NCBI RefSeq assembly: GCF_001194135.2
Contig: NC_068981.1
Span: 45,067,289-45,131,288 of the forward strand
Direction: 5' to 3'
Length of the DNA: 64,000 nucleotides
From: Octopus bimaculoides
Taxonomy: Eukaryota
Each line of letters opens with the position of its first letter. The stretch's first letter is position 1. Of this stretch, positions 516 through 52,811 are shown in pieces. The position numbers and the translations under genes are program-made. The notes beneath the pieces were generated by a model. It was not told the DNA's origin, made no database searches, and saw only the letters and a list, made by a program, of their open reading frames with translations.

Positions 516-1249
516 CTAACTATTACTTTCTCAGATGCAGCCCAGAATTTTGTCAGTGAACAGGTCACGGTCTCAAAGCGATGAAAATATTTTGACAAAT
601 TAAATTTAAATGTTGAAGTGAATCTTACGGACTGTGTGTGTTATTTTAAATGGCTTATAAACACCTTCCACGCTGCAATTGAATATGTATATATATATAC
701 ATATATTATTGTACCACTAAAGCAAAACTCTAAAAAAAAGATGTACTCCATCTAGTGAGAGGTAAATATCATTTACTGTACATAAAATAAACATACAAGC
801 TGCTTATATTTGTTGCTTGGAGATGCTGGTCTTTGTAGGTTTACACAAGAAGCCTTGTGTTTCTAAGCAATTTACAGGCTTTGAGCATCTATTCTATTCA
901 ATCTAAACATCAAAGTACCCGGCGAAGAAAGAATCCGAGTGAAAACGAAACGAGTAAATTAGAGTTACGTTCCATTCGGACGTAGAACAATAATTAAGCT
1001 AGCTGTTGTACAAAAATATCGTAGAGATAAGTCAAGAGTCCATGTGAGAGCAATTCAATTTGAACAGAGGTGTGGCCTCCACTCTTCCAAAGAAATGTTC
1101 CCATCTTTTATTATTTCCTGAAAATTTCGGACGTGGAATTTAGTAGGGTGTTGAAATTTTTACATCTGATTTTTACTTATATATATATATACATACATAC
1201 ATATATATATATGTGTGTGTGTGTGTGGATAGGCGCTTGCAAGTGTGCA

Positions 1250-1785
1250 CGTATATAAATATATCGATATTTATATCTATAGTTCCAGCTTACACAAAGT
1301 ACAAACAACAGAGAAAAATAAGGCGATATAAGAAAGGTGTTATAAATCAAACAGCTGTTTCTGGGTTCTCGAAGATCTATAATCATTTTGGTAGATGTGA
1401 TTCATCTCAATATGTGGCCGTAATGAATACAAACGACACTGAATGAGACGAGACTCCATCATCTGTGTAGAAAAGATCTTACATTTCAGATCATAATGCA
1501 GAGATGTTCAAAGATGATCTTTGAAATCCTTTGCATTACGAACTGCATTGTAAGATCTTTTCAATCCTCATGAAGGAGGCTCATCTTGACCAATGTTATT
1601 CGCATCCATACGACTGAATATTGTGATGATCATAACCTACCAACACTTTTATGGATCTCCGAGCACCCATAATTTTATACCTTGGATTTATACCACATTT
1701 CTTGCAATATTTTCATTCTCTCTGTCGTTTGTACCCAGTGTAAGCTGAACCTATTAAGATAAATATCTCTATATATTCATACTTA
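1250..1785. repeat. Long imperfect palindrome (two ~265-bp inverted arms, centre 1516)
   Basis: TTCAAAGAT(1507-1515)/ATCTTTGAA(1517-1525) and GAAAAGATCTTACA(1470-1483)/TGTAAGATCTTTTC(1549-1562) are perfect reverse complements; 1286-1314 matches the reverse complement of 1719-1747 at 25/29. All are symmetric about 1516. Confidence 0.9.
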
Positions 1786-1948
1786 AAAATGCGTTGTCTA
1801 AACATCTACGGTTTTTGCCTTCTCTCGTTGTGCATGTGTACATATATATTTTTTTCCATTTCACACTCAAACTCATATTTAGCACATATAATACATTTAA
1901 TGTATTTAGTTTGCTTATTGCCTCTCTTTGTCTTTCTCTGCCTATCTG

Positions 1949-1983
<35 letters not shown>

Positions 1984-2049
1984 ATGTGTGTGTGCGTATA
2001 TATATATATATATTCATATAAATCATCTTTGAACCTCGGGTGATGAGAA

Positions 2050-7330: not shown

Positions 7331-9255
7331 AACCCATTGCGCATGTGCGTCAGTCTTGCTGTTTTCCGTTAACCAATGTGGACGTGAGTTTTGGGTCGGT
7401 CCAAAAAAAAAAAAAAAGAGAAAAGAACAATTTGAAGAGTTCGCCGGGCTAAGTCCGTTTTGTTGCTCAGCTGGGCAATACTTTATTGATTGTATTTATT
7501 TTTTCAGTAGGTTTTTGTCTAGCAGTGTGGCATCTTTGCTTTCCTTGGCAAATTTTTTGTGTGTTCGTTATACGAACAAAATTGTGTATTCGCTGTCTGT
7601 GGTAGGCGTGTTCGCTATACCATAGCGGTGAAAATTTTTATTTGTGGCTTTTTAGTCGAAAAAACTTTGTGTGAAGATACTGTGCGCCAATTTGGGGGCG
7701 TGTCCGCCCAAAGATTTGGATTTTACCATTCCTGATGGCCCGGAGTACCTGTTGGCCGAATACGGTTGTTTCTTTTGCCGTGTAGAACTGTTTTTTTTTC
7801 CTTTTCTCCTCTCAGTCTGTCTCTTTTTATGAACTGTGTGTTTGTATTAACTTTTTATTCAACGTCTTTCTTTTGTAAACATTTTTATTTATTTGACTTT
7901 TTAACATGGCAAACAATAATAAAGTGACTGCCTTGGAGTGGGAGGTTGTTCCGCCCAAGCAGTGGGTGAAAGACTTACAAAATAGAGCGGTGGTGCTAAG
8001 GACCTATTCTAGGTCGCTTGGCACCATCGTACGGGACGCTATAGAGAAAGAACTAGCAGATTATCTGCCCACTGTTAAATATATCTTTCGGGGGGGGGGC
8101 ACATTTTCAACGGTCTGGTTGCTGTTTGGTACCCCCGAGGAGGCTGGTACATCTGCCAGCAGGCCCCTGGAGGGGCGCAAAATTTTTTTGCACCCCTCAT
8201 ACCGTGGGAAAAATAGTTACAGCCTGGGTATGTGGACTGCTCCCAGGTACCAAGGCCGGATGGATTGCTGATGCCATCCGGCAGGGCTTGGGGGAAAGAA
8301 TATGTGCCCCCCCCCATTGGCTGGGGAGACGGAGAATGTCGTGGAGGCACTCGTAGAATTAAAGTCTGTGAGAAAANNNNNNNNNNNNNNNNNNNNNNNN
8401 NNNNNNNNNNNNNNNNNNNNNNNNNNNNNNNNNNNNNNNNNNNNNNNNNNNNNNNNNNNNNNNNNNNNNNNNNNNNNNNNNNNNNNNNNNNNNNNNNNNN
8501 NNNNNNNNNNNNNNNNNNNNNNNNNNNNNNNNNNNNNNNNNNNNNNNNNNNNNNNNNNNNNNNNNNNNNNNNNNNNNNNNNNNNNNNNNNNNNNNNNNNN
8601 NNNNNNNNNNNNNNNNNNNNNNNNNNNNNNNNNNNNNNNNNNNNNNNNNNNNNNNNNNNNNNNNNNNNNNNNNNNNNNNNNNNNNNNNNNNNNNNNNNNN
8701 NNNNNNNNNNNNNNNNNNNNNNNNNNNNNNNNNNNNNNNNNNNNNNNNNNNNNNNNNNNNNNNNNNNNNNNNNNNNNNNNNNNNNNNNNNNNNNNNNNNN
8801 NNNNNNNNNNNNNNNNNNNNNNNNNNNNNNNNNNNNNNNNNNNNNNNNNNNNNNNNNNNNNNNNNNNNNNNNNNNNNNNNNNNNNNNNNNNNNNNNNNNN
8901 NNNNNNNNNNNNNNNNNNNNNNNNNNNNNNNNNNNNNNNNNNNNNNNNNNNNNNNNNNNNNNNNNNGGAGTGATGAAAATTGTGAATTTGTAATATATTG
9001 AAATTGTGTAAAAAATTGTAATATCGATAGTGAAAGAGGTTTGCAACCTCATATGTGTTTTTTAATGGAAAAAAAAAAGAACACTCTTTTCGAGGGGTTA
9101 TCAGTCGGCTGGCGCTGGTGCCTCTCTCATTATTTGTTTCATCCTTATCAGCCTCCTCTCATTAACGTCCATGTCCAGCCTGCAGTTACTTTATGTCTGT
9201 CTATCTTTGTTTGTCCCTTCTATGTAACACCATTATTGGCGAATTTATTGAAATA
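7331..9255 (+). mobile_element. L1/Tx1-like non-LTR retrotransposon flanked by 12-bp TSD AAGTAGCTTGCT (interior in gap 8377-8967)
   Basis: TSD at 7319-7330 and 9256-9267; ~570-bp 5' UTR; GC-rich ORF1; 3' end with A-rich terminus resembling that of the L1/Tx1 ORF2 copy at 13931-15435. Confidence 0.7.
7906..8376 (+). pseudogene. Retrotransposon ORF1 (gag-like) with two homopolymer frameshifts
   Basis: MANNNKVTALEWEVVPPKQWVKDLQNRAVVLRTY..HPSYRGK / KIVTAWVCGLLPGTKAGWIADAIRQGLG / PLAGETENVVEALVELKSVRK; frames switch at A5 (8209-8213) and C9 (8307-8315). Confidence 0.65.
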
Positions 9256-9612
9256 AAGTAGCTTGCTTACGAACCACATGGTTCCGGGTTCAGTCTTCTA
9301 CTATAGCCTCGGGCCGATTAAAGCCTTCTGAGTGGATTCGGTAGCCGGAAACTGAAAGAAGCCCGTCGTATATATGTATATATATATATATGTATGTGTG
9401 TGTATATGTTTGTGTGTCTATGTTTGTTCCCCCAACATCGTTTGACAACCGATGCTGGTGTCTTTACGTCCCCGTAACCTAGCTTTTCGGCAAAATAGAC
9501 CGATAGAATAAGTACTAGGTTTACAAAGAATAAGTCCTGGGGTCGATTTGCTCGTCTAAAGGCGGTGCTCCAGCATGACCACAGCCAAACTACTGAAACA
9601 AGTAAAAGAGTA
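9256..9612 (+). mobile_element. Family-B SINE body (central microsatellite, tail ..GACTGAAACAAGTAAAAG-like)
   Basis: Collinear with the reverse complement of 19215-19643; has a ~27-bp deletion after GGGTTCAGTC. Confidence 0.9.
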
Positions 9613-16125: not shown

Positions 16126-16170
<45 letters not shown>

Positions 16171-16189
16171 TTTCTCTTTTATTTCTTTA

Positions 16190-16578
16190 TTTCAGTCATT
16201 ATACTGCCGCTATACCGGGGCACGCCTTGAAGAATTTATAGTCGAATATAGCCACACCACTACTTTTCATTTGAGCTTGGTATTTATTTCCTCGACCTCT
16301 TTTGCCGACCCACTAGATTACGTGCATATAAACATACCAACACCAACACTAGTTGTCAAAGCTTGGTAAGGGAGGCAAGCACAATCACACATGATAATAT
16401 ACATATGTATACGACGAGCTTCTTGCAGCTTCCTTCTACCAAATCCACTCACAAGTCTTTGACCGGGCCGAGTGTAGAGTAGAAGACACCTGCCCAATTT
16501 ACCACGCAGTGGGACTGACTCTGGAACTATGTGGTTGGGAAGCGAGCTTCTTATTACACATCTATTCTTGCGCAGATT
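16190..16578 (-). mobile_element. Family-B SINE, diverged
   Basis: TTTCAGTCATT..AAATCCACTCACAAGTCTTTG..CCACGCAGTGGGACTGACTCTGGAACTATGTGG is homologous to 19215-19643. Confidence 0.85.
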
Positions 16579-17250
16579 TAAACGTGTCTTGTGTTTGTGT
16601 TTTTGCTCCTAGGAATATCTGGGCGTAGAATCATATATAAATAAATATAAGCACATATACATTTGAAAGTACGTGTGCGTAAGTAAATGGCAAACGAAAT
16701 CTGTGTCTAATATTTGATGTTATCCACTTGCGTGGGATACTGACATGGTAAGTAGCATGTTCTTAGGACTGAGTTCATAAGTTAAAAATCAAATTTCTTC
16801 ATTTTCTTCGAAGGTAATTAATGTGGACTTTACAGCCAAATGCAAATTTAAAATACTTTTCACTGGCATCTCAAAATAGAAATGAAATGTAACATTAGCA
16901 GAATATAATGAGGGCTGCCTTAAGACTTTTAATTCGTTAAAAGGATTTTAGCGTAAATGAAGAGAATCATTTCAATAATAAAAACACCACACATACACAC
17001 ACACACACATACAAACATAGAGGAGCACACGGACTTACACTCACATAACACACACATGTTATATCGGGAAAAATGTTATACATAAGTATACATGTGTGCT
17101 CCTGAAATGTGATCGTATCCATACAGCGTATACAGTACTATGTTCAGCGGAGATTCTGATAAAGAAAATTGCATTCGCAATGAATTCAAAAGACATGAGA
17201 TGGAAAGCAAAATTTAAAAGTCAAAAAAGTCTAAACTGATATCTTCTGAG

Positions 17251-17355
17251 AACGGTAGAATAAGTATTAGGCTTACAAAGAATAAGTACTGGGGTCGATT
17301 TGCTCGATTAAAGGCATGGTCGCAGTTACATGACTAAAACAAGTAAAAGAATACA
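17251..17355 (+). mobile_element. Family-B SINE 3' fragment
   Basis: GTAGAATAAGTATTAGGCTTACAAAGAATAAGTACTGGGGTCGATTTGCTCGA matches 9500-9610. Confidence 0.85.
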
Positions 17356-18360
17356 AGAATATATATATATATACTCGTTCAGAAGCATATAATGCTTTCT
17401 TATATTTCATTACAATGTATATAGAAGTATACTTTATGTAGACACATACACACAAGCACGCAGACACCATGCACGCACACACGCACGCACGCGCGCACAC
17501 ACAGACACGCACACACAGACACACACACACGCACACACACACATACACACGCACATGCAAACACACGGAGACACAGGATTGTATGTTTGAATATCTATAA
17601 GAAACAGCATTTTAAAGTTAATTTGAGTGAAACAATAAACCACAGCCGATCATACACACAGTAATCAGTTTCAGCATGTATCAAAATATTGACCCCACTC
17701 CGTCTGATATCTTCTGAGTTTATTAGTAACATTCAATAATTTTACGTAGACACAGAAGGAAAAAAATATTGATACTCATTTTTCCTCTGGCCAGTCTCAT
17801 TAGTTTTTCTTTCTTCTTCGTCGACATTATAATCGATGTTCATAAGAAATTCATTTACTCTATTTGTTACATGTTTACAGTAACGCTTCCAGCAATCTGC
17901 TAGTTATTGTTCAGTGACACATATAATGTCTACTGCAGAGTTCAACATCATAGATTTACGATTCTTGTCTATTTTGTAACAGGCTGTTTGATTACTCGAC
18001 GCATTGCTGATGTCTAATGTAAGCAAATTATATAGAGCTTCACCAATGTTTAGATTATATTCTTTCACAATAACCACACATATTTATACACACCATGCTT
18101 ACTAACACCTAGGAAAAAGATAAACACATACTTCTTCCTCGATACAAATAATATCACTCAGACACACGTACACTAGCTGTTTAAGGCAGAAATGTCCTCA
18201 TGCATAGACACTCATATGTATATACATACACACACATATTCACATATAACCATACATACACACATGCATACATACTACATGCACACACATATATTTACGT
18301 GTGTATATATAATTGAAATTTACAGAAGAACAAAAGACGAAGATAGGTGTATAAGCAAAA

Positions 18361-18918: not shown

Positions 18919-19214
18919 TCTGTTGTGTCTAGGGAGAGTCATTCTCGTTTTGTTCCTTATAATTTAACACACTCACCGGTAAAATTTCCCTTTATTTCTT
19001 ATTTTAATTTTCCTAAAATTTTCGTTGCGTCTTACAAACTTTTCTATAGTCTTCACTCTGTCCATTATTTACACTGCGTTACATTTTGTTTGTTCGTGTC
19101 TCGGTCAGTGTGTGTGTGTGTGCCTATGCATGCATGCATGTATGTATGTAGGTATCTATACATGCATGCATGTATGTGTATGCGTATATGTGTGTGCATG
19201 CACGTCTTTTATCT

Positions 19215-19643
19215 TTTAAATCTTTTTCTTGTTTCAGTCATTTGACTGTGGCCATGCTGGAGCACCGACTTTAGTGGAGCAAATCGACCCCAGGACCTAT
19301 TCTGTGTAAGCCTAGTACATATTCTATCGGTCTCGTTTGCCGAACCGCTAAGTAACGGGGACATAAACACACCAGCATCGGTTGTGAAGAGATGTTGGGA
19401 GGACAAACACTGACACACAGACATACACACATACACACACACACACACACACACATACACACACACATATACATATATACGACGGGCTTCTTTCACTTTC
19501 CGTCTACTATATCCACTCGCAAGGGTTTGGTCAGCCCAAGGCTACAGTAGAAATCACCTGCCCAAAGTGCCACACAGTGGGACTGAACCCGAAACCATGT
19601 GGTTGATAAGCAGGCTACTTACCACACAGCTACTCCTATGCCT
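19215..19643 (-). mobile_element. Full-length family-B SINE
   Basis: Head, B-box-like GGGTTCAGTCCC, central (CA)n and tail are all present; collinear with 7297-7330 + 9256-9612. Confidence 0.92.
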
Positions 19644-21262
19644 ATGTATATATGTATGTATCGAAATCTAAATCGAAATATATATATATATATATGCATA
19701 TGCAGGTATATTTTATAATCTGTGAATTTCAGTATTCCACAGAGGTTCTACTTGCACGTTGTACTTCCTATTTTCGTATAAATGTCATAAATTATTATTT
19801 TTTAAAATCTCCAATGCAGATATCATATGAACTGATAAGTTGAAACGCATATCTAGCTATGTATTTAAATTCAAATTATACTTTCTAGTACACAGAGAAA
19901 AAGATGTGCAACGCATACCCATAGTATATATAGAGTTTTAAAGCAATAAATATAGACAAGAAAATGTGATAACGATACTTGCTACTTATGGTATGATTTG
20001 AAGATTTTGGAAGTATATCCATCAACATTTTTATAGTAAAGCGGTATGCAGGCTGAGTGAGAAATTGAAATATTGAGAGTACTATTCAGGAAAATGAACA
20101 TAAAAATTTCGAGAAGAATGCAGAAAAGGAAGGCGAATATTTTGAAATTGTTTTTCTGAACCATTTTTTGTTTTGAGAGGAACCGGCGCATGTGTACAGA
20201 TACAATAAACCAAAATGTAACAAAATTAACCACATGTAACAATAGAGTAAATGAATTTGTTATGAACATCGATTATAACGTCGACAGAGACGAAAGAGAA
20301 ACAGAGAGTATTTGTTTCAGGATGAGTGGATAAAGATGAGTGGTACATCGGTGATAATTTGGTGCATATATATTTTAGCAAGTTTCAAAGCTTAGTGAAG
20401 TTTGTTGTTCAGTTTGGGGATATTATTGATGGTCTATAGTACTTAGATTTGTAGAATTAAACCGTGTAATAGAAGATTTGAAAAAAGTACGCGAGTGTGT
20501 ACAGATAAATTATTACTACGAAAAATGTGATGAAATGAGCAAAATATGTCGCTACGTATATAAGTGGAATACTATAAACAAATATAAAAGCGTGAGTTTA
20601 TGATAAAATCATGAGAGTAACAGAAAATGATAAAGGGAAATTCATTCATGGATTTAAATATATTTCCGTCAAACATTTGTTTTTCCTTTAATGAATAAAT
20701 TTGTGTCATAATATGCAAATAGGTTTATTTTCCTAACTAAGAACCTTATTATAGGTTTGTGTATATGTTATACTGATTTAGGTTCTCTGTATTTGTAAAA
20801 CCTTTTCACTAACGTGTTACGATACTTATTCAGTCATTCAGAAATATTTCACATTGACACTTCAATTAAAAATTCTGCGAATATTGCACTCCTCTATACT
20901 TATGTAGTTTTACTCGCTAAATTTTAAAATTCATACAAAGTATATTGCCCCAAAGCTCCACAAAAATTTTACAGGGATATCGGTTTAATGTTTAGGAGAG
21001 GTTGATGATTGATTTGCTATCACCACTAGACTAAGTCTAGCCTCTTGAACTCCAATGTTGAGTTTTACTTAAATACATATATACTGAAATTGCGATAATT
21101 TTATCAAGTCTGCGGGAATTAAAATGACAAAATGTTTGCTGCTTGGTTTCGCGAAATGTTTGAAGGAAAACTGATGAATGTATAATTGAAATTTAAATCT
21201 CTTGTTTTGGTAAAAATGCCATATAGTGAAGATGTTTATCCGCTAGACCAACATGGTAACGT

Positions 21263-21560
21263 GTAAAGACCCCTTTTGGACATGAATGGCTATGGAAGTG
21301 CACCTAAAATGTTTCCCTCCAAGGTGAATGTCTCAGTAAGATTGTTTATGGAAGACCATGTGTCGCCCATGCATTCCGGTGTCAATGATGTCATCCAAGG
21401 GAAAGTTAAAGGATGATGCAGCTAGGTAAAAGTAACGTCACAATTCATTTCTTCAGATGAGTGACCTGGAACAAGAAAAAACAACGCACAACCCAGTCAA
21501 GAAATCCAACTCATTACCTCTCGACTGGGAATCCGACGCTCTTTCCATTGACCATGCGCT
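21263..21560 (-). mobile_element. Family-C SINE, near full length
   Basis: Reverse-complement tail GGGGTCTTTACACGTTAC is identical to 22379-22395; head region matches 18499-18638. Confidence 0.8.
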
Positions 21561-22344: not shown

Positions 22345-22395
22345 TTTTGAGCAATTCCATAGCCATTCATGACCGAAAGGGGTCTTTACACGTTA
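22345..22395 (+). mobile_element. Family-C SINE (or partner LINE) extreme 3' tail
   Basis: TTCCATAGCCATTCATGACCGAAAGGGGTCTTTACACGTTAC matches the reverse complement of 21257-21300. Confidence 0.75.
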
Positions 22396-24115
22396 CTATG
22401 TCGGTCTAGCGGATAAACATCTTCTCTATAATGCATTTTTAGCAAAACAAGAGATTAAAATTTTTATTTTATGTTCTGTCAAGTGGAGGTAAGTGATTTG
22501 GTGTCTACTTGGGAGTATTTAAAGTGTAACATACCATTTGAATAGCTGGCGTATTAATGCTTATTGGTGCCTGGAGATGCATATGTAAGATATACATGAG
22601 ATATTTTTTCTTACATTCGCGTTTGTATCTGCATCCAGTACTATTTAGCATGTGAAACATTTCAAGAACTGACAGGAAATGATTTAAGATATGAAGATCA
22701 CTGGAATATGCATCTTCTCTTGGGGATAGATATAATTTTCACAATTTTCTCGTCTTCATGTAACTTAAAATCTTATACTATTAAAACATTGTATGGTTTA
22801 TGCATATTCCTATTGTTGGCGTGAATTTATTACTTCCATTGGGTACACACCCATCAGTAAAAATAAAAACAATTTAATCCAACAAATAAATAAATTACTT
22901 CACAACTACAAATACAAGAAAGCTAAAACAAAAACCATCCTAAATATTTGCATACAAGCATCACTAGCGGTTACTACACCTTATAACAAATAGTTTACAA
23001 GTATGCATAAAAAATAACGAAATTTCAAGAAACGTATAAAGAAGAAAATTTTCTCGAAGTAGGACTTTCCAAAAGAACATGAAAAACATACTATTTAAAG
23101 AATTACTTGTGAAAACAGTATTAACGTTACATTGTCCCCTTCATAGAAGTGGGTCATGTACATATCCATTGGATCATATACACGTGACAGATTATTTTGA
23201 ATAGCAGCAGGTAGGAATATACATTGCTCACAATTAAAAGTGGTCGGGTTCCGTGATAAAACATTGTGTTTTTACGGTCACCCTAGATGGACTGCGAAGG
23301 CTGGGTCGAGGTTGATGGAAATTGAACGCGTATTTCCAGTCTTGCTAATCTAGCGGAAACCGGTTTTGGGGAGTAAGGTAAGCAGGCAATAACATCGGCA
23401 GGTTTTAAAAAAATAGTGGTTTGCTATGAAATAAACAATAAGATACGAATCAACAAATTTTTGTAAGCCAGTAGTAATGGAGCAAACGTGAAATGCGGGA
23501 GATGTAATGCGAAACTCACTATAGATGCTTCCGAAAAGCATCGTAAACGATGTGCATGCATCGACATTGGGCTTCGCCCATTTCATTTTACTCTAAAAGA
23601 CTAAAACTAGATTGTCAGAACTTAGGCATATGATTTGTAGTGATAGCAGAGGTACAGCGTTGCATCGAAATGACAATGCAGTGTTAGATAAGCGCGTGAG
23701 TCTTTATTCCAAGCAAATCTGTGGGATCTACCAGCAGCAATTTGCTTCACTGTGTGGGACAAGTGGCTGGCGCATTGCAGGATAAATTTCATTGCCTGTC
23801 TCGACAGCTTGCCGCAAGTTTCGGCAGCAGAATCGAAGTAGGCTATTGAGGTAGGTAATAAAATTCTTCAGAGTTTTTCCGTAAAGTCCATAGCAACCAT
23901 AACATTTGGTAATCATATTTTTACTTTTTATCTCACCTACTAACCCTATTACTTCATCACCGTCATCGTTTTTTTATGAACTGAAAGAAATTGTAAAATC
24001 GCTTTATAATGTTCTACTAAACAGATAATTATGTAGTAAATGAAAGAAATCACAATATTTATTGTTAGTCATTTTCTCTTTCTCTTCCTTCGTATTATTA
24101 TAATATGAATGAGTT

Positions 24116-31623: not shown

Positions 31624-32369
31624 ATATATTATCTATGTGAATATAAATGCATACATAGGTACATATATACATATGATTGTATATACGTATAGGGACGCCT
31701 TAGGCGCAATCAGTAGTATTTGGACAGAGAAGATTAGTAGTTTAAGCTGTTTGGTCTCGACAAAAAGAGTATTTCTGCACATGTATTTATGCACGTATGA
31801 GAACGTATGACACTTAATAACGAAATGAGATGCAGCTGCTCTAGATGATAATAAAATATTCAATAACTATATAGCGAACTCTAATGAAATCTTTAAAATA
31901 ATTGAGTGCTTTTATTGTCAATCATATATTGCTTTTGATAAATCCAAGGTTAGTTCTTCTTCAGGACCATCTACCATGCAAGTTACATACAAAAGTTGAT
32001 ATATACAGTTTGCACTTTACATGATAATCGATGAATGATGTTTATAAAAAACAATTATTGAAGTGTCGGGCTATCGTCATCATCATCCATTTCAACACAC
32101 ATACACATGCGTCGTCATGAGTTTGTGTTCTCGCTATTGATGTGCGTGTATTCATATGTTCATATCTAGCTCTCTCTTTCTCTCTCTTCATNNNNNNNNN
32201 NNNNNNNNNNNNNNNNNNNNNNNNNNNNNNNNNNNNNNNNNNNNNNNNNNNNNNNNNNNNNNNNNNNNNNNNNNNNNNNNNNNNNNNNNNNNNNNNNNNN
32301 NNNNNNNNNNTATATATATGTATATATGTTACTGTGAAGCATTGTGTAGAATATATTTTATAAAAGATC

Positions 32370-33725
32370 GTGGGTAAAGCCAAAATAATTCGAAGTAAAT
32401 GCAAGATCAATAACAAGAAAACAAATATGTGGCTTAACGTAGAATTACCTTGTATTCGATATTTTTGGGTTTTGACCCCCATTTTCAAGAAATTGATCTT
32501 GTGTTTCTTTTGGTGTATGAGGATAGCCTAAGAGATAACCTCAGAGAGGTTGCCCCTGTTCCGCTGTCCTGCCTTGATGTGGACAGTGTACTACCGTGTC
32601 TGGCATTTTCGTAGATATTTCTTAACAGAAGTGTCTGCCTGCATGTGTTCCTTAATGCCTACATGCACTTGTGTGATGGGCTTTCGATATAGGATGCGCC
32701 ATATTTTCCACAGATGATGTCATATGCGACTTAGGTCCTGTGGCACAATTCACTGTCATTGATGGGCAGTTCGACAATGTGCACTACTTAGAGTAGTGGG
32801 AGGTATTGTTCTTAGGCACAGCTTTTCTCAGGGAAGGGCCAGCGTGCACTAACTGTATGCCGAGTTCATCCCTTCGGACTGCGAGTTGTATCGCTGCTAT
32901 AGTTCTGTGTGGTAGCTTTAGGAAGCACGTGCTGGTTCTTCCGGGGTTTACTGACCTTGATGCTTTTCAGGCGCCGTTGTTTAGCTAAAGATGGTGGGTA
33001 GCCATTCTGGGTTAGACCTCTGAGGAACTGCTTGGTGTAGACGGCTTTGTCGGTCACGTTGCTCCATATGTTATTTATATGCTCTGGTGGGCAGGGCTGT
33101 CTGGCAGTGAACGGAAAGTTTTCTATTAGCGGCTTTTCTATAGAATCTGGTGAATATGCAGCCTTCCTCTGTCATCTTGCGCTGGAAGTCTAGTAGAGAG
33201 ATCGTTACGGATTCCTCTGTATGTTCAATCAAGAATTTGATATTTACCTCGGTGCTATTGCAGGTCCAGTATATGCTAATGACCTCATCCCCGCAGGACC
33301 TGATGATAAGGATGTCATCAACGTACCTGGAGAATATGCATGAGCAGCAGGGCTTGAGTGCTGTGCGTTCTAGCTTATCCATGTACGTGATGGCAAGCAG
33401 CACTGAAAGGTTAGATGCCATAGGTAGGCCGGAAGTCTGTAAATAACACCGTTATATTGAAAGTAGGTGTTACCAACTATAATGGTTAGTAACTCTCGTA
33501 TGTCTGATAGTGTGAGTTCGAAGAGCTGGACGTTGATTGACAGGGAGGTGTGGGAAGATGAATGGGAAGGTTGGGAGGAGGAATTTGCGAGGGAGCAATC
33601 CCCTCCATCCTTTTTGACGACAGAAGTTCTACAGCGATACAACACGCAGTTCACATGGAAGGACTCGACATAGGAGTTGGTACACATCGGCACTTCCCTG
33701 ACAAAAGCTCTGTCCACGAACAAAA
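32370..33725 (-). mobile_element. Penelope-like element, 5'-truncated (RT, thumb, GIY-YIG, terminal repeat)
   Basis: NTYFQYNGVIY..GLPMASNLSVLLAITYMDKLE..FSRYVDDIL..FYRKAAN; QNGYPP; VAYDIICGKYGASYI. Confidence 0.9.
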
Positions 33726-34264
33726 CCGCTCACAACTCTAAGAGTTGCACATTGTCGAACGGTCCCATCAATGACCCTTAATTTTGCCAGAGGACCTATG
33801 TCGTATATGAGATCATCTGTGACAAATGTTGTGCATCCTACACTGGAAACACATCAACAAAACTGCATGTACGAAATGCAGGCAGGCACTTCCGTTAAGA
33901 AACATCCATGGAAATGCCAGACACGGGAGTTAACAGTGCATATTAAAGCAATACAGCGGGTCAGGGGCAACTTTAGATTCTCTGAGGCTATTCTCATACA
34001 CCAAAAGAAACCAAAGATAAAAAAATAGAAAGGAGTTACAGGAAGCTAAGTGGTAGCTATAGCAACACCCTTCTGCGCATGTCCACTCCACACACGCTCA
34101 CAACACACATGCACATCGGCAACTGTCGCCAAGTTCTTGAAAATGGAGTCATAACCCCAAAATATTGTTTATAATTTAAGTCTACATTAATTCACATATT
34201 TTTCTTATGATTTAGCTTGCATTTACTTCTCATTGTTTTGGCTTTACCCTCGATCTTTTATACA

Positions 34265-34265
<1 letters not shown>
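33726..34265 (+). mobile_element. Inverted partial copy of the same Penelope-like element (GIY-YIG + terminal repeat)
   Basis: TGCACATTGTCGAAC..CCCATCAATGAC and CTTGCATTTACTTC..TTTTGGCTTTACCC.CGATCTTTTATA match the reverse complement of 32370-32800. Confidence 0.9.
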
Positions 34266-34317
<52 letters not shown>

Positions 34318-34327
34318 NNNNNNNNNN

Positions 34328-51959: not shown

Positions 51960-52811
51960 GTTACAAACACACATATGGCTGGCCAAGATTATCCTGCCCG
52001 GAGTGCAGCGGGACATCGACGTATTGCTGGGGTTCAGCGACTTGATCCTGCCGACCAAGGTGGGGGACTCCGCTACATGCAGCGTTAGCATTTCGTCTAC
52101 AATTCTTCTATCTATCATAGACTGACGGACGCGAATGCCATAATTTTGGGCAAACGACTCAGCAAAGCTGAGTTGACGTGCTTTCTTTGCAAATGGCTGC
52201 GACGACTGGCTACTGGCCCTGCTTGCACAACATTGTGTTTCCCACGGAAACAGCTGGCCATAATCCTCTCTTCAAACTGGATGACATGCGCTGGGTGCTT
52301 CCTGTTGACATGTGACTTCAAGTTGTAGAGCCTCGCCGCTTGTCTCTTAATGGTGGGCAACTTGAGCTGGTACATGAGGCACCGGAAGAACAGGATTTTG
52401 GTGTCCCTCTTGTCCCTTAACGTAAGAACAAAATAGTCTTCCATGTAGAGCAACGATTTCTGAGACATCTGGCTCCCAGCCTGAGCAAACTCTGTCTTAA
52501 ATACAGCCGTTGCAGACTCCCCAATAGGCTCTTCATTCTCAAGCCAAACAAAAGCGTCGTCACCTTACATAGCTATAAACCATAACGTGATAAGCCGATA
52601 ACGTACAGTGCAGTCACTGACAATATAAGACTGACTATAATGTGATACCATCGTAAATGTACAGAACTCAAAACTGCACAATTGCACAATGCTGATCAGT
52701 TACATGCTGTTGCGTCGACCAATCACGTCTTGTCACGTGTACACGTAGTAAGCCAATAGCGTGCCCGATGGACTTCGAGGCATGGCCGCAACAGACAGGA
52801 ATTTTGATCTA
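51960..52811 (-). mobile_element. hAT-like DNA transposon 5' fragment (BED zinc finger N-terminus)
   Basis: DYFVL..FFRCLMYQ..LYNLKSHVNRKHP (BED-like), then DRRIVDEMLTLHVAESPTLVGRIKSLNP..SRCT; CCAAT-like boxes lie upstream (52718, 52753). Confidence 0.7.

What the first reader, a model, noticed from the sequence alone, without database searches (positions are those of the whole stretch)
1250..1785. Unexplained ~535-bp imperfect palindrome with a 1-nt centre (giant hairpin)
Seen: exact mirror symmetry about base 1516. The 9-bp and 14-bp segments are perfect, 1286-1314 vs 1719-1747 match at 25/29, and similarity continues to about 1250/1785 with very few indels (roughly 70-75% by eye). It has no ORF and matches no other element in the window. 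Inference: an old foldback/palindromic MITE, a hairpin-capped break or replication scar, or a long hairpin-RNA locus (endo-siRNA or ADAR substrate; cephalopods edit dsRNA heavily). Many arm differences appear to be A vs G, which would be G-U wobbles in a minus-strand transcript; this was not counted rigorously.
Basis: partly seen in the sequence, partly recalled or inferred. Interest (0 to 1): 0.72.

Follow-up and report, generated by a model that had tools for sequence, protein, structure and literature searches.

The report
Old decayed 530-bp DNA palindrome
A real but ancient and heavily mutated 532-base DNA palindrome, most likely the dead relic of a small hairpin-shaped transposon or of a one-off fold-back copying error, with no sign that it is kept for any function.

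Summary
The palindrome is real. The arms are 1251-1515 and 1517-1782, around the single base 1516. They match at 189 of 263 aligned positions (72%), with 5 gap columns. The local alignment scores 102, against 12 +/- 1.6 for shuffled sequence. Either strand folds into one long hairpin.

Everything measurable looks like neutral decay of a palindrome that was once near-perfect:
- Identity is flat along the arms.
- Mismatches are 36 transitions and 38 transversions.
- The longest perfect helix is 14 bp.
- There is no ORF of note, no Rfam family, no tRNA, and no third copy in the 64 kb, even with a two-arm profile.
- Target-site duplications cannot be read, because the ends are TA-rich and self-complementary.

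Every external search returned nothing. Two control ORFs from the same window also returned nothing, so those negatives carry little weight. Genomic copy number and host identity stay untested.

My estimates:
- Relic of a fully palindromic (foldback-type) MITE: about 0.5.
- In-situ fold-back or template-switch inverted duplication: about 0.3.
- Dedicated hairpin-RNA gene: about 0.03.
- Assembly artefact: about 0.02, because 28% arm divergence is not what an assembly error produces.

Interest is low.

The parts
1251..1515 (+). Left arm of the palindrome (265 nt)
   Evidence: aligns to the reverse complement of 1517-1782 at 189/263 (72%), score 102 against shuffles at 12 +/- 1.6. nhmmer finds the other arm at E = 1e-26.
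1516..1516 (.). Single unpaired centre base (G), the axis of symmetry
   Evidence: a perfect 9-bp run on each side (1507-1515 / 1517-1525). The perfect runs near the centre have midpoint 1516; in the outer part the midpoint shifts to 1516.5 because of indels.
1517..1782 (+). Right arm of the palindrome (266 nt)
   Evidence: as for the left arm.
1176..1250 (.). Compound microsatellite, (TA)n(TACA)n(TA)n(TG)n, plus 23 unique bases, abutting the left arm. Possibly a later expansion or insertion inside an originally longer left arm.
   Evidence: TRF. If this block is removed, 1150-1175 lines up with 1784-1809. Weak.
1150..1175 (+). Possible outer continuation of the left arm (weak)
   Evidence: 18 of 26 positions complementary to 1784-1809 at one anchored offset, against 5-11 of 30 at the neighbouring offsets. 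In a free alignment 16.5% of shuffles do as well. Not established.
1784..1809 (+). Possible outer continuation of the right arm (weak)
   Evidence: as above.

Best explanation
This is a non-functional relic. A palindrome that was perfect or nearly so was created in one step: a roughly 265-bp sequence joined to its own reverse complement with no spacer. It has since decayed neutrally to 72% arm identity. Most likely it arrived as one copy of a fully palindromic (foldback-type) miniature DNA transposon that was cut and pasted into TA-rich DNA. The family, and this copy, are now dead. If the locus lies in a transcribed region the RNA would fold into a long imperfect hairpin, and ADAR could edit it incidentally, as it edits any inverted repeat. 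Nothing indicates that the hairpin is maintained. Shown: the palindrome, its extent, its decay pattern, and the lack of coding or known-RNA content. Inferred: the single-step origin, the transposon identity, and the neutrality.
For: The palindrome is far beyond chance. Total length is 532 bp with no coding capacity, which fits the MITE size range. The whole element is an inverted repeat down to a 1-nt centre. Its ends are TA-rich and it sits among TA/TG microsatellites. The decay looks neutral: identity is flat along the arms, K2P distance between arms is 0.356, transitions and transversions number 36 and 38, there are 4 indel events, and wobble-compatible mismatches show no significant strand bias. 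The arm-to-arm divergence (28-30%) falls in the same range as the pairwise divergence of other old dispersed repeats in this window, which are 62-76% identical. That is what two halves of an old transposon copy should show. There is no Rfam family at gathering score and no tRNA-like part. Precedent: Xenopus has a roughly 200-bp Harbinger repeat with a palindromic consensus that folds on itself, and the octopus genome has an exceptionally high fraction of loci able to form long dsRNA (PMC5625713).
Against: There is no second copy in the 64-kb window, even with a two-arm profile. This excludes only families above roughly 10^5 copies in a Gb-sized genome. No unambiguous target-site duplication was found: the candidates, such as TATATAAATA / TATATTCATA, are TA-rich, and such sequence is at once a direct and an inverted repeat. 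No recognisable superfamily terminal motif was seen. No relative was found in any collection I could reach, but control ORFs from the same window also found nothing. If the weak outer extension (1150-1175 with 1784-1809) is real, the ends are not at 1251 and 1782.
Confidence: 0.5

Rival explanations
1. An in-situ fold-back inverted duplication that never moved. During replication or break repair, a 3' end snapped back on its own strand, or switched to the complementary template, at a short inverted repeat. It copied about 265 nt backwards and then returned to the original template. This left original plus inverted copy with no spacer, and the pair has since decayed neutrally.
For: A 1-nt centre is what fold-back priming leaves (PMC7467729, PMC10622511). 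Short-range template switches are documented to create perfect hairpins in one event (PMC8794818, PMC10710096, PMC5453318). The sequence is single-copy in the window and has no clear TSD. Its decay pattern is the same as under the transposon model.
Against: Documented short-range template switches are mostly tens of bases, and documented fold-back inversions are kilobases to megabases and usually end at a telomere or involve further rearrangement. A clean interstitial 265-bp event is less usual. Nothing in the sequence separates this from a transposon copy. A 13-nt echo of the centre sequence at 2022-2034 is at chance level (E = 0.42).
Confidence: 0.3
2. Two copies of one short dispersed repeat (SINE-sized, about 265 bp) that inserted head to head independently, the second exactly at the end of the first.
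For: The arm length is typical of a SINE. Inverted pairs of old repeats do occur in this window (21176-21301 / 22351-22476 and 32311-32908 / 33620-34311).
Against: A junction with a 1-nt spacer that ends both copies at the same position is very unlikely for independent insertions. The other inverted pairs in the window have spacers of 711 and 1049 nt. There is no tRNA-like head, no simple-repeat tail at the centre, and no third copy in the window.
Confidence: 0.05
3. A functional long hairpin-RNA locus, transcribed (minus strand favoured) and processed into small RNAs, or serving as a dedicated ADAR substrate.
For: Both strands fold into one long hairpin: plus strand -190.6 kcal/mol (z = -13) and minus strand -232.8 kcal/mol (z = -17). 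The minus strand has more G-U-compatible mismatches (22 vs 14) and a 21-bp uninterrupted helix. Hyper-editing is very high in octopus and tracks dsRNA-forming loci (PMC5625713).
Against: Any palindrome folds this way. The strand bias is not significant (p = 0.24). [quoted passage not shown] Transitions and transversions are equal, and identity is flat with no better-kept segment. Molluscs, including O. bimaculoides, show no evidence of an endo-siRNA pathway (PMC12479628). No Rfam match reaches a gathering score. Transcription is unknown and the host is unverified.
Confidence: 0.03
4. An assembly or library artefact (chimeric fold-back read).
For: The window is a gapped draft, with 13 runs of N totalling 4133 bases.
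Against: Artefactual palindromes have near-identical arms. Here the arms differ at 28% of positions and by 4 indels. There is no N within 3 kb of the palindrome.
Confidence: 0.02

Closest known systems
Palindromic MITEs, for example the roughly 200-bp Harbinger-class repeat of Xenopus tropicalis with a palindromic consensus (PMC5625713). From memory, also zebrafish Angel and the C. elegans Cele/PAL-type elements.
   Same: Short, non-coding, and inverted-repeat over essentially the whole length with a very short loop. Folds alone into a tight hairpin. Would be an ADAR target if transcribed.
   Different: Those are families with thousands of recognisable copies, defined ends and TSDs. Here only one copy is seen, no TSD can be read, and no family or superfamily can be assigned. 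The arms are far more decayed (72%) than the heavily edited frog copies.
Fold-back inversions and short-range template-switch mutations (PMC7467729, PMC10622511, PMC3907307, PMC8794818, PMC5453318)
   Same: An inverted duplicate abutting its original with little or no spacer, created in a single event.
   Different: An intermediate size class (265-bp arms) and interstitial, with no associated rearrangement visible. The event is ancient, so the diagnostic microhomology and the ancestral state cannot be read.
Drosophila hairpin-RNA (hpRNA) endo-siRNA loci (PMC5392987; the original descriptions are recalled from memory)
   Same: An inverted repeat of several hundred bp with a short loop that could form long dsRNA.
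   Different: hpRNA arms are near-perfect and yield Dicer-2-dependent 21-nt siRNAs. Here pairing is 72-80% and the longest perfect helix is 14 bp. The presumed host phylum shows no evidence of an endo-siRNA pathway (PMC12479628).

Membership tests
MITE / foldback-type non-autonomous DNA transposon | Terminal inverted repeats | tested here: met
   The whole 532 bp is an inverted repeat, including the outermost 28 nt at 20/28.
MITE / foldback-type non-autonomous DNA transposon | Small size and no coding capacity | tested here: met
   532 bp. Stops in all six frames. The longest overlapping ORF is 77 aa, with no homologue.
MITE / foldback-type non-autonomous DNA transposon | Target-site duplication flanking the ends | tested here: inconclusive
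   The scan of all boundaries within about 15 nt found only TA-rich candidates (a 6-mer ATATAT; a 10-mer at 8/10). Such sequence is simultaneously a direct and an inverted repeat.
MITE / foldback-type non-autonomous DNA transposon | Multiple dispersed copies in the genome | not testable with these tools
   No further copy in the 64-kb window, which has power only against very high copy numbers. The source genome is not in any searchable collection.
MITE / foldback-type non-autonomous DNA transposon | Ends shared with an autonomous element, or a superfamily terminal motif | not testable with these tools
   No repeat library (Dfam/Repbase) is available. No canonical motif is evident at 1251 or 1782.
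Fold-back / template-switch inverted duplication | Inverted copy adjacent to the original with a short or absent spacer | tested here: met
   1-nt centre.
Fold-back / template-switch inverted duplication | The ancestral or orthologous locus carries exactly one arm | not testable with these tools
   No orthologous sequence could be retrieved.
hpRNA / endo-siRNA locus | Long near-perfect dsRNA stem | tested here: not met
   72% Watson-Crick, 77% (plus strand) or 80% (minus strand) with G-U. The longest uninterrupted helix is 14, 14 and 21 bp respectively.
hpRNA / endo-siRNA locus | Transcription and Dicer-type small RNAs from the arms | not testable with these tools
   No expression data. The literature reports no evidence of an endo-siRNA pathway in molluscs (PMC12479628), but the host is unverified.
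ADAR hyper-editing substrate (inverted-repeat dsRNA) | Long stable intramolecular dsRNA in a transcript | tested here: inconclusive
   The predicted hairpin is very stable but is not 'nearly perfect' as described for hyper-edited loci (PMC5625713). Transcription is unknown.
ADAR hyper-editing substrate (inverted-repeat dsRNA) | Clustered A-to-G RNA-DNA differences | not testable with these tools
   No RNA-seq. The DNA-level A/G mismatches between the arms show no significant strand bias, and they would not be evidence of editing in any case.
miRNA or other described RNA family | Match to an Rfam covariance model at its gathering score | tested here: not met
   No match at gathering score in the window. 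The best hit inside the palindrome is mir-3118 at 26 bits, against a gathering score of 89.

The most novel reading that the evidence does not exclude
The palindrome is a dedicated, transcribed long-hairpin gene of a cephalopod. The minus-strand RNA, stabilised by G-U pairs, would be kept as a source of small RNAs or as a structured ADAR-binding RNA. That would be an hpRNA-like locus in a phylum reported to lack endo-siRNAs.
Probability: 0.03. Interest if true: 0.55.

Novelty: new member of a known kind. Interest (0 to 1): 0.15.

Why it matters
It matters little by itself. Decayed palindromic repeats are a routine component of repeat-rich animal genomes. They are one of the sources of intramolecular dsRNA that ADAR edits promiscuously. 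If the host is an octopus, this is one of very many such loci, since that genome has an unusually high density of dsRNA-forming loci (PMC5625713). It would become interesting only if it proved single-copy, conserved across species and expressed as a hairpin RNA. The useful result here is negative. The feature is real and is not an artefact. The sequence-level hint of function, a wobble bias, does not hold up when counted.

Tried and rejected
1. Copy search in the window. I used blastn with word size 7, nhmmer with each arm, and a two-arm profile HMM run with --max. Only the two arms themselves were found, apart from TA-rich low-complexity noise.

2. Exact-protein look-ups of the two longest ORFs overlapping the arms. 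Neither is on record.

3. Protein-space searches with the 77-aa arm ORF.
- Word-indexed search: no candidate.
- Exhaustive phmmer against 1.84 billion representatives: 0 hits.
- As controls, a reverse-transcriptase ORF (33074-33421, minus strand) and another long ORF (7906-8268) from the same window also gave nothing.
- So these collections do not appear to hold this genome. The negatives say little, and the host could not be identified.

4. Degenerate DNA patterns built from the two best-conserved arm blocks. There were 0 matches in metagenome contigs and 0 in viral contigs. Distant blastn against phages and plasmids found no match.

5. Rfam at gathering score over the whole window gave nothing. 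At E <= 10 over 1000-2100 it gave only sub-threshold miRNA-like hits, mostly on the flanking microsatellites. ARAGORN found no tRNA-like sequence.

6. Extending the palindrome outwards.
- The direct flanks do not align.
- A mirrored GCCTATC next to the microsatellites on both sides (1228-1234 and 1940-1946) is intriguing. The motif occurs 3 times in the window, as expected by chance, and the sequence between it and the arms does not align.
- The pairing of 1150-1175 with 1784-1809 appears only when 1176-1250 is removed, and it is not significant as a free alignment.

I did not pursue it.

8. I considered an origin from a parvovirus- or densovirus-like hairpin terminus and dropped it. There is no viral ORF nearby and no match in the viral contigs.

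Full report
**Observation**

The sequence at 1250-1785 is a genuine palindrome. The repeat finder reports two collinear inverted pairs, 1251-1351/1682-1782 and 1423-1515/1517-1609. The second has a single base between its arms.

A gapped local alignment of the left side against the reverse complement of the right side merges these into one alignment, 1251-1515 versus 1782-1517. It has 189 matches, 74 mismatches and 5 gap columns in 4 indel events, which is 71.9% identity. It scores 102, whereas 300 shuffles gave 12.0 +/- 1.6 with a maximum of 19.

The one correction is that solid similarity ends at 1251 and 1782.

**Anatomy**

- Identity is even along the arms, at 18-24 matches per 30 columns, with no gradient toward the centre or the ends.
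- The Kimura two-parameter distance between the arms is 0.356, or about 0.18 substitutions per site per arm if they started identical.
- Mismatches are 36 transitions and 38 transversions. Four are of the CpG-decay type.
- All six frames are full of stops. The longest overlapping ORF is 77 aa.
- No Rfam family reaches its gathering score anywhere in the window. The sub-threshold hits at 1000-2100 are weak miRNA-like matches, mostly on the flanking TA/TG microsatellites.
- ARAGORN finds no tRNA-like sequence, so nothing suggests a tRNA-derived SINE head.
- The left arm abuts a compound microsatellite at 1174-1227. A second microsatellite lies 160 nt beyond the right arm, at 1949-2013.

**The hairpin-RNA idea**

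As any palindrome must, both strands fold into one long hairpin. The plus strand gives -190.6 kcal/mol (z = -13) and the minus strand -232.8 kcal/mol (z = -17).

The minus strand is more stable because 22 of the transition mismatches are G-U-compatible on that strand, against 14 on the plus strand. It is not significant (binomial p = 0.24).

- Pairing is 72% Watson-Crick, 77% with G-U on the plus strand and 80% on the minus strand.
- The longest uninterrupted helices are 14, 14 and 21 bp respectively.
- The equal numbers of transitions and transversions, the indels and the flat identity profile are what neutral decay gives. No segment is better kept than the rest.
- A recent survey of 32 molluscs, including O. 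bimaculoides, found no evidence of a dedicated endogenous siRNA pathway (PMC12479628).
- If the locus is transcribed, incidental editing is plausible, but that is a generic property of inverted repeats.

Whether the host is a cephalopod at all could not be checked. Two control ORFs from the window found no relatives in the protein collections.

**Artefact**

An assembly or library chimera would give near-identical arms. Here 28% of positions and four indels differ, and there is no N run within 3 kb. The window is a gapped draft with 13 N runs, but that does not bear on this feature.

**Origin**

The arms meet at a single base, so the palindrome was almost certainly born in one step as a perfect or near-perfect fold-back. 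Two routes fit.

(a) It is one copy of a fully palindromic miniature DNA transposon.
- Such families are well known. One example is the palindromic Harbinger-class repeat that is the most edited repeat of Xenopus (PMC5625713).
- The size (532 bp), the lack of coding capacity, the TA-rich ends and the TA-rich surroundings all fit.
- The arm-to-arm divergence falls in the range seen between other old dispersed repeat copies in this same window, which are 62-76% identical.

(b) It is an in-situ fold-back or template-switch duplication that never moved.
- These are documented at smaller and at larger scales (PMC8794818, PMC5453318, PMC7467729, PMC10622511).

The tests that would separate the two routes are copy number, target-site duplication and the orthologous empty site.

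- Copy number. There is no third copy in the window by blastn, nhmmer or a two-arm profile. This excludes only families of roughly 10^5 copies or more in a Gb-sized genome. Nothing outside the window could be reached.
- Target-site duplication. The only candidates are TA-rich strings that are direct and inverted repeats at once, so this is inconclusive.
- Orthologous site. Not retrievable.

On priors I put the transposon relic at about 0.5 and the in-situ duplication at about 0.3. Two independent head-to-head insertions of a SINE-sized repeat get about 0.05, because a 1-nt junction ending both copies at the same position is very unlikely. The other inverted pairs in the window have spacers of 711 and 1049 nt.

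**Possible larger extent**

If the 75-bp block 1176-1250 (the microsatellite plus 23 unique bases) is removed, 1150-1175 pairs with 1784-1809 at 18 of 26 positions, directly continuing the arms. This would make the microsatellite a later expansion inside a longer left arm. However, the match is anchored on a chosen deletion, and 16.5% of shuffles do as well in a free alignment.

A mirrored GCCTATC sits beside both flanking microsatellites, but its count in the window is at chance level and the neighbouring sequence does not align.

I list both observations as weak and do not build on them.

**Verdict**

This is a real, ancient, neutrally decaying palindrome of a known kind: a palindromic MITE relic or a fold-back duplication. 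Its family membership cannot be tested here. There is no evidence for function. Interest is low.

Noticed in passing
window 32311-32908 and 33620-34311 (spacer 32909-33619): A second large inverted repeat. The arms are about 600 nt at 76-79% identity, with a roughly 108-nt extra segment in the right arm, around a 711-nt spacer. Minus-strand ORFs at 33071-33723 carry a reverse-transcriptase fragment with a YVDD motif (weak Pfam RVT_1 hit, E = 6e-4). Both outer ends abut assembly gaps (N runs at 32192-32310 and 34318-34327), so the arms may be longer. It looks like a retroelement with inverted repeats (DIRS- or Penelope-like) or two inverted copies. It is unrelated in sequence to the 1516 palindrome.
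   Followed up: partly
window 21176-21301 and 22351-22476: A 126-nt inverted pair at 88% identity, separated by 1049 nt. It could be the terminal inverted repeats of a roughly 1.3-kb element or two inverted copies of a short repeat.
   Followed up: no
window 9256-9609, 16133-16587, 17248-17361, 19170-19655: An old dispersed repeat family with at least four copies or fragments in the window, 62-76% identical pairwise and in both orientations. I used it only as an age yardstick for the palindrome arms.
   Followed up: no
window 1228-1234 (minus strand) and 1940-1946 (plus strand): The 7-mer GCCTATC sits directly against the inner edge of both microsatellites that flank the palindrome, in mirrored orientation. 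Only 3 copies exist in the window, which is the chance expectation, yet two are placed this way. The sequence between the motif and the arms does not align.
   Followed up: partly
window 2022-2034: ATCATCTTTGAAC is the exact reverse complement of 1506-1518, which spans the palindrome centre. It lies just beyond the right-hand microsatellite. The BLAST E-value is 0.42 within the 2.2-kb region, so this is probably chance.
   Followed up: partly
window 52115-52468 (minus strand): A 117-aa ORF with a weak match to the Spin-doc/C2H2_12 zinc finger (E = 1e-3). This finger is the kind found at the N-terminus of hAT-like or domesticated transposase proteins.
   Followed up: no
whole window: There are 13 runs of N totalling 4133 bases. 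Many of them are bordered by (TA)n or TG-type microsatellites, so this is a short-read draft assembly that breaks at simple repeats. GC content is 23-42% per 2 kb.
   Followed up: no
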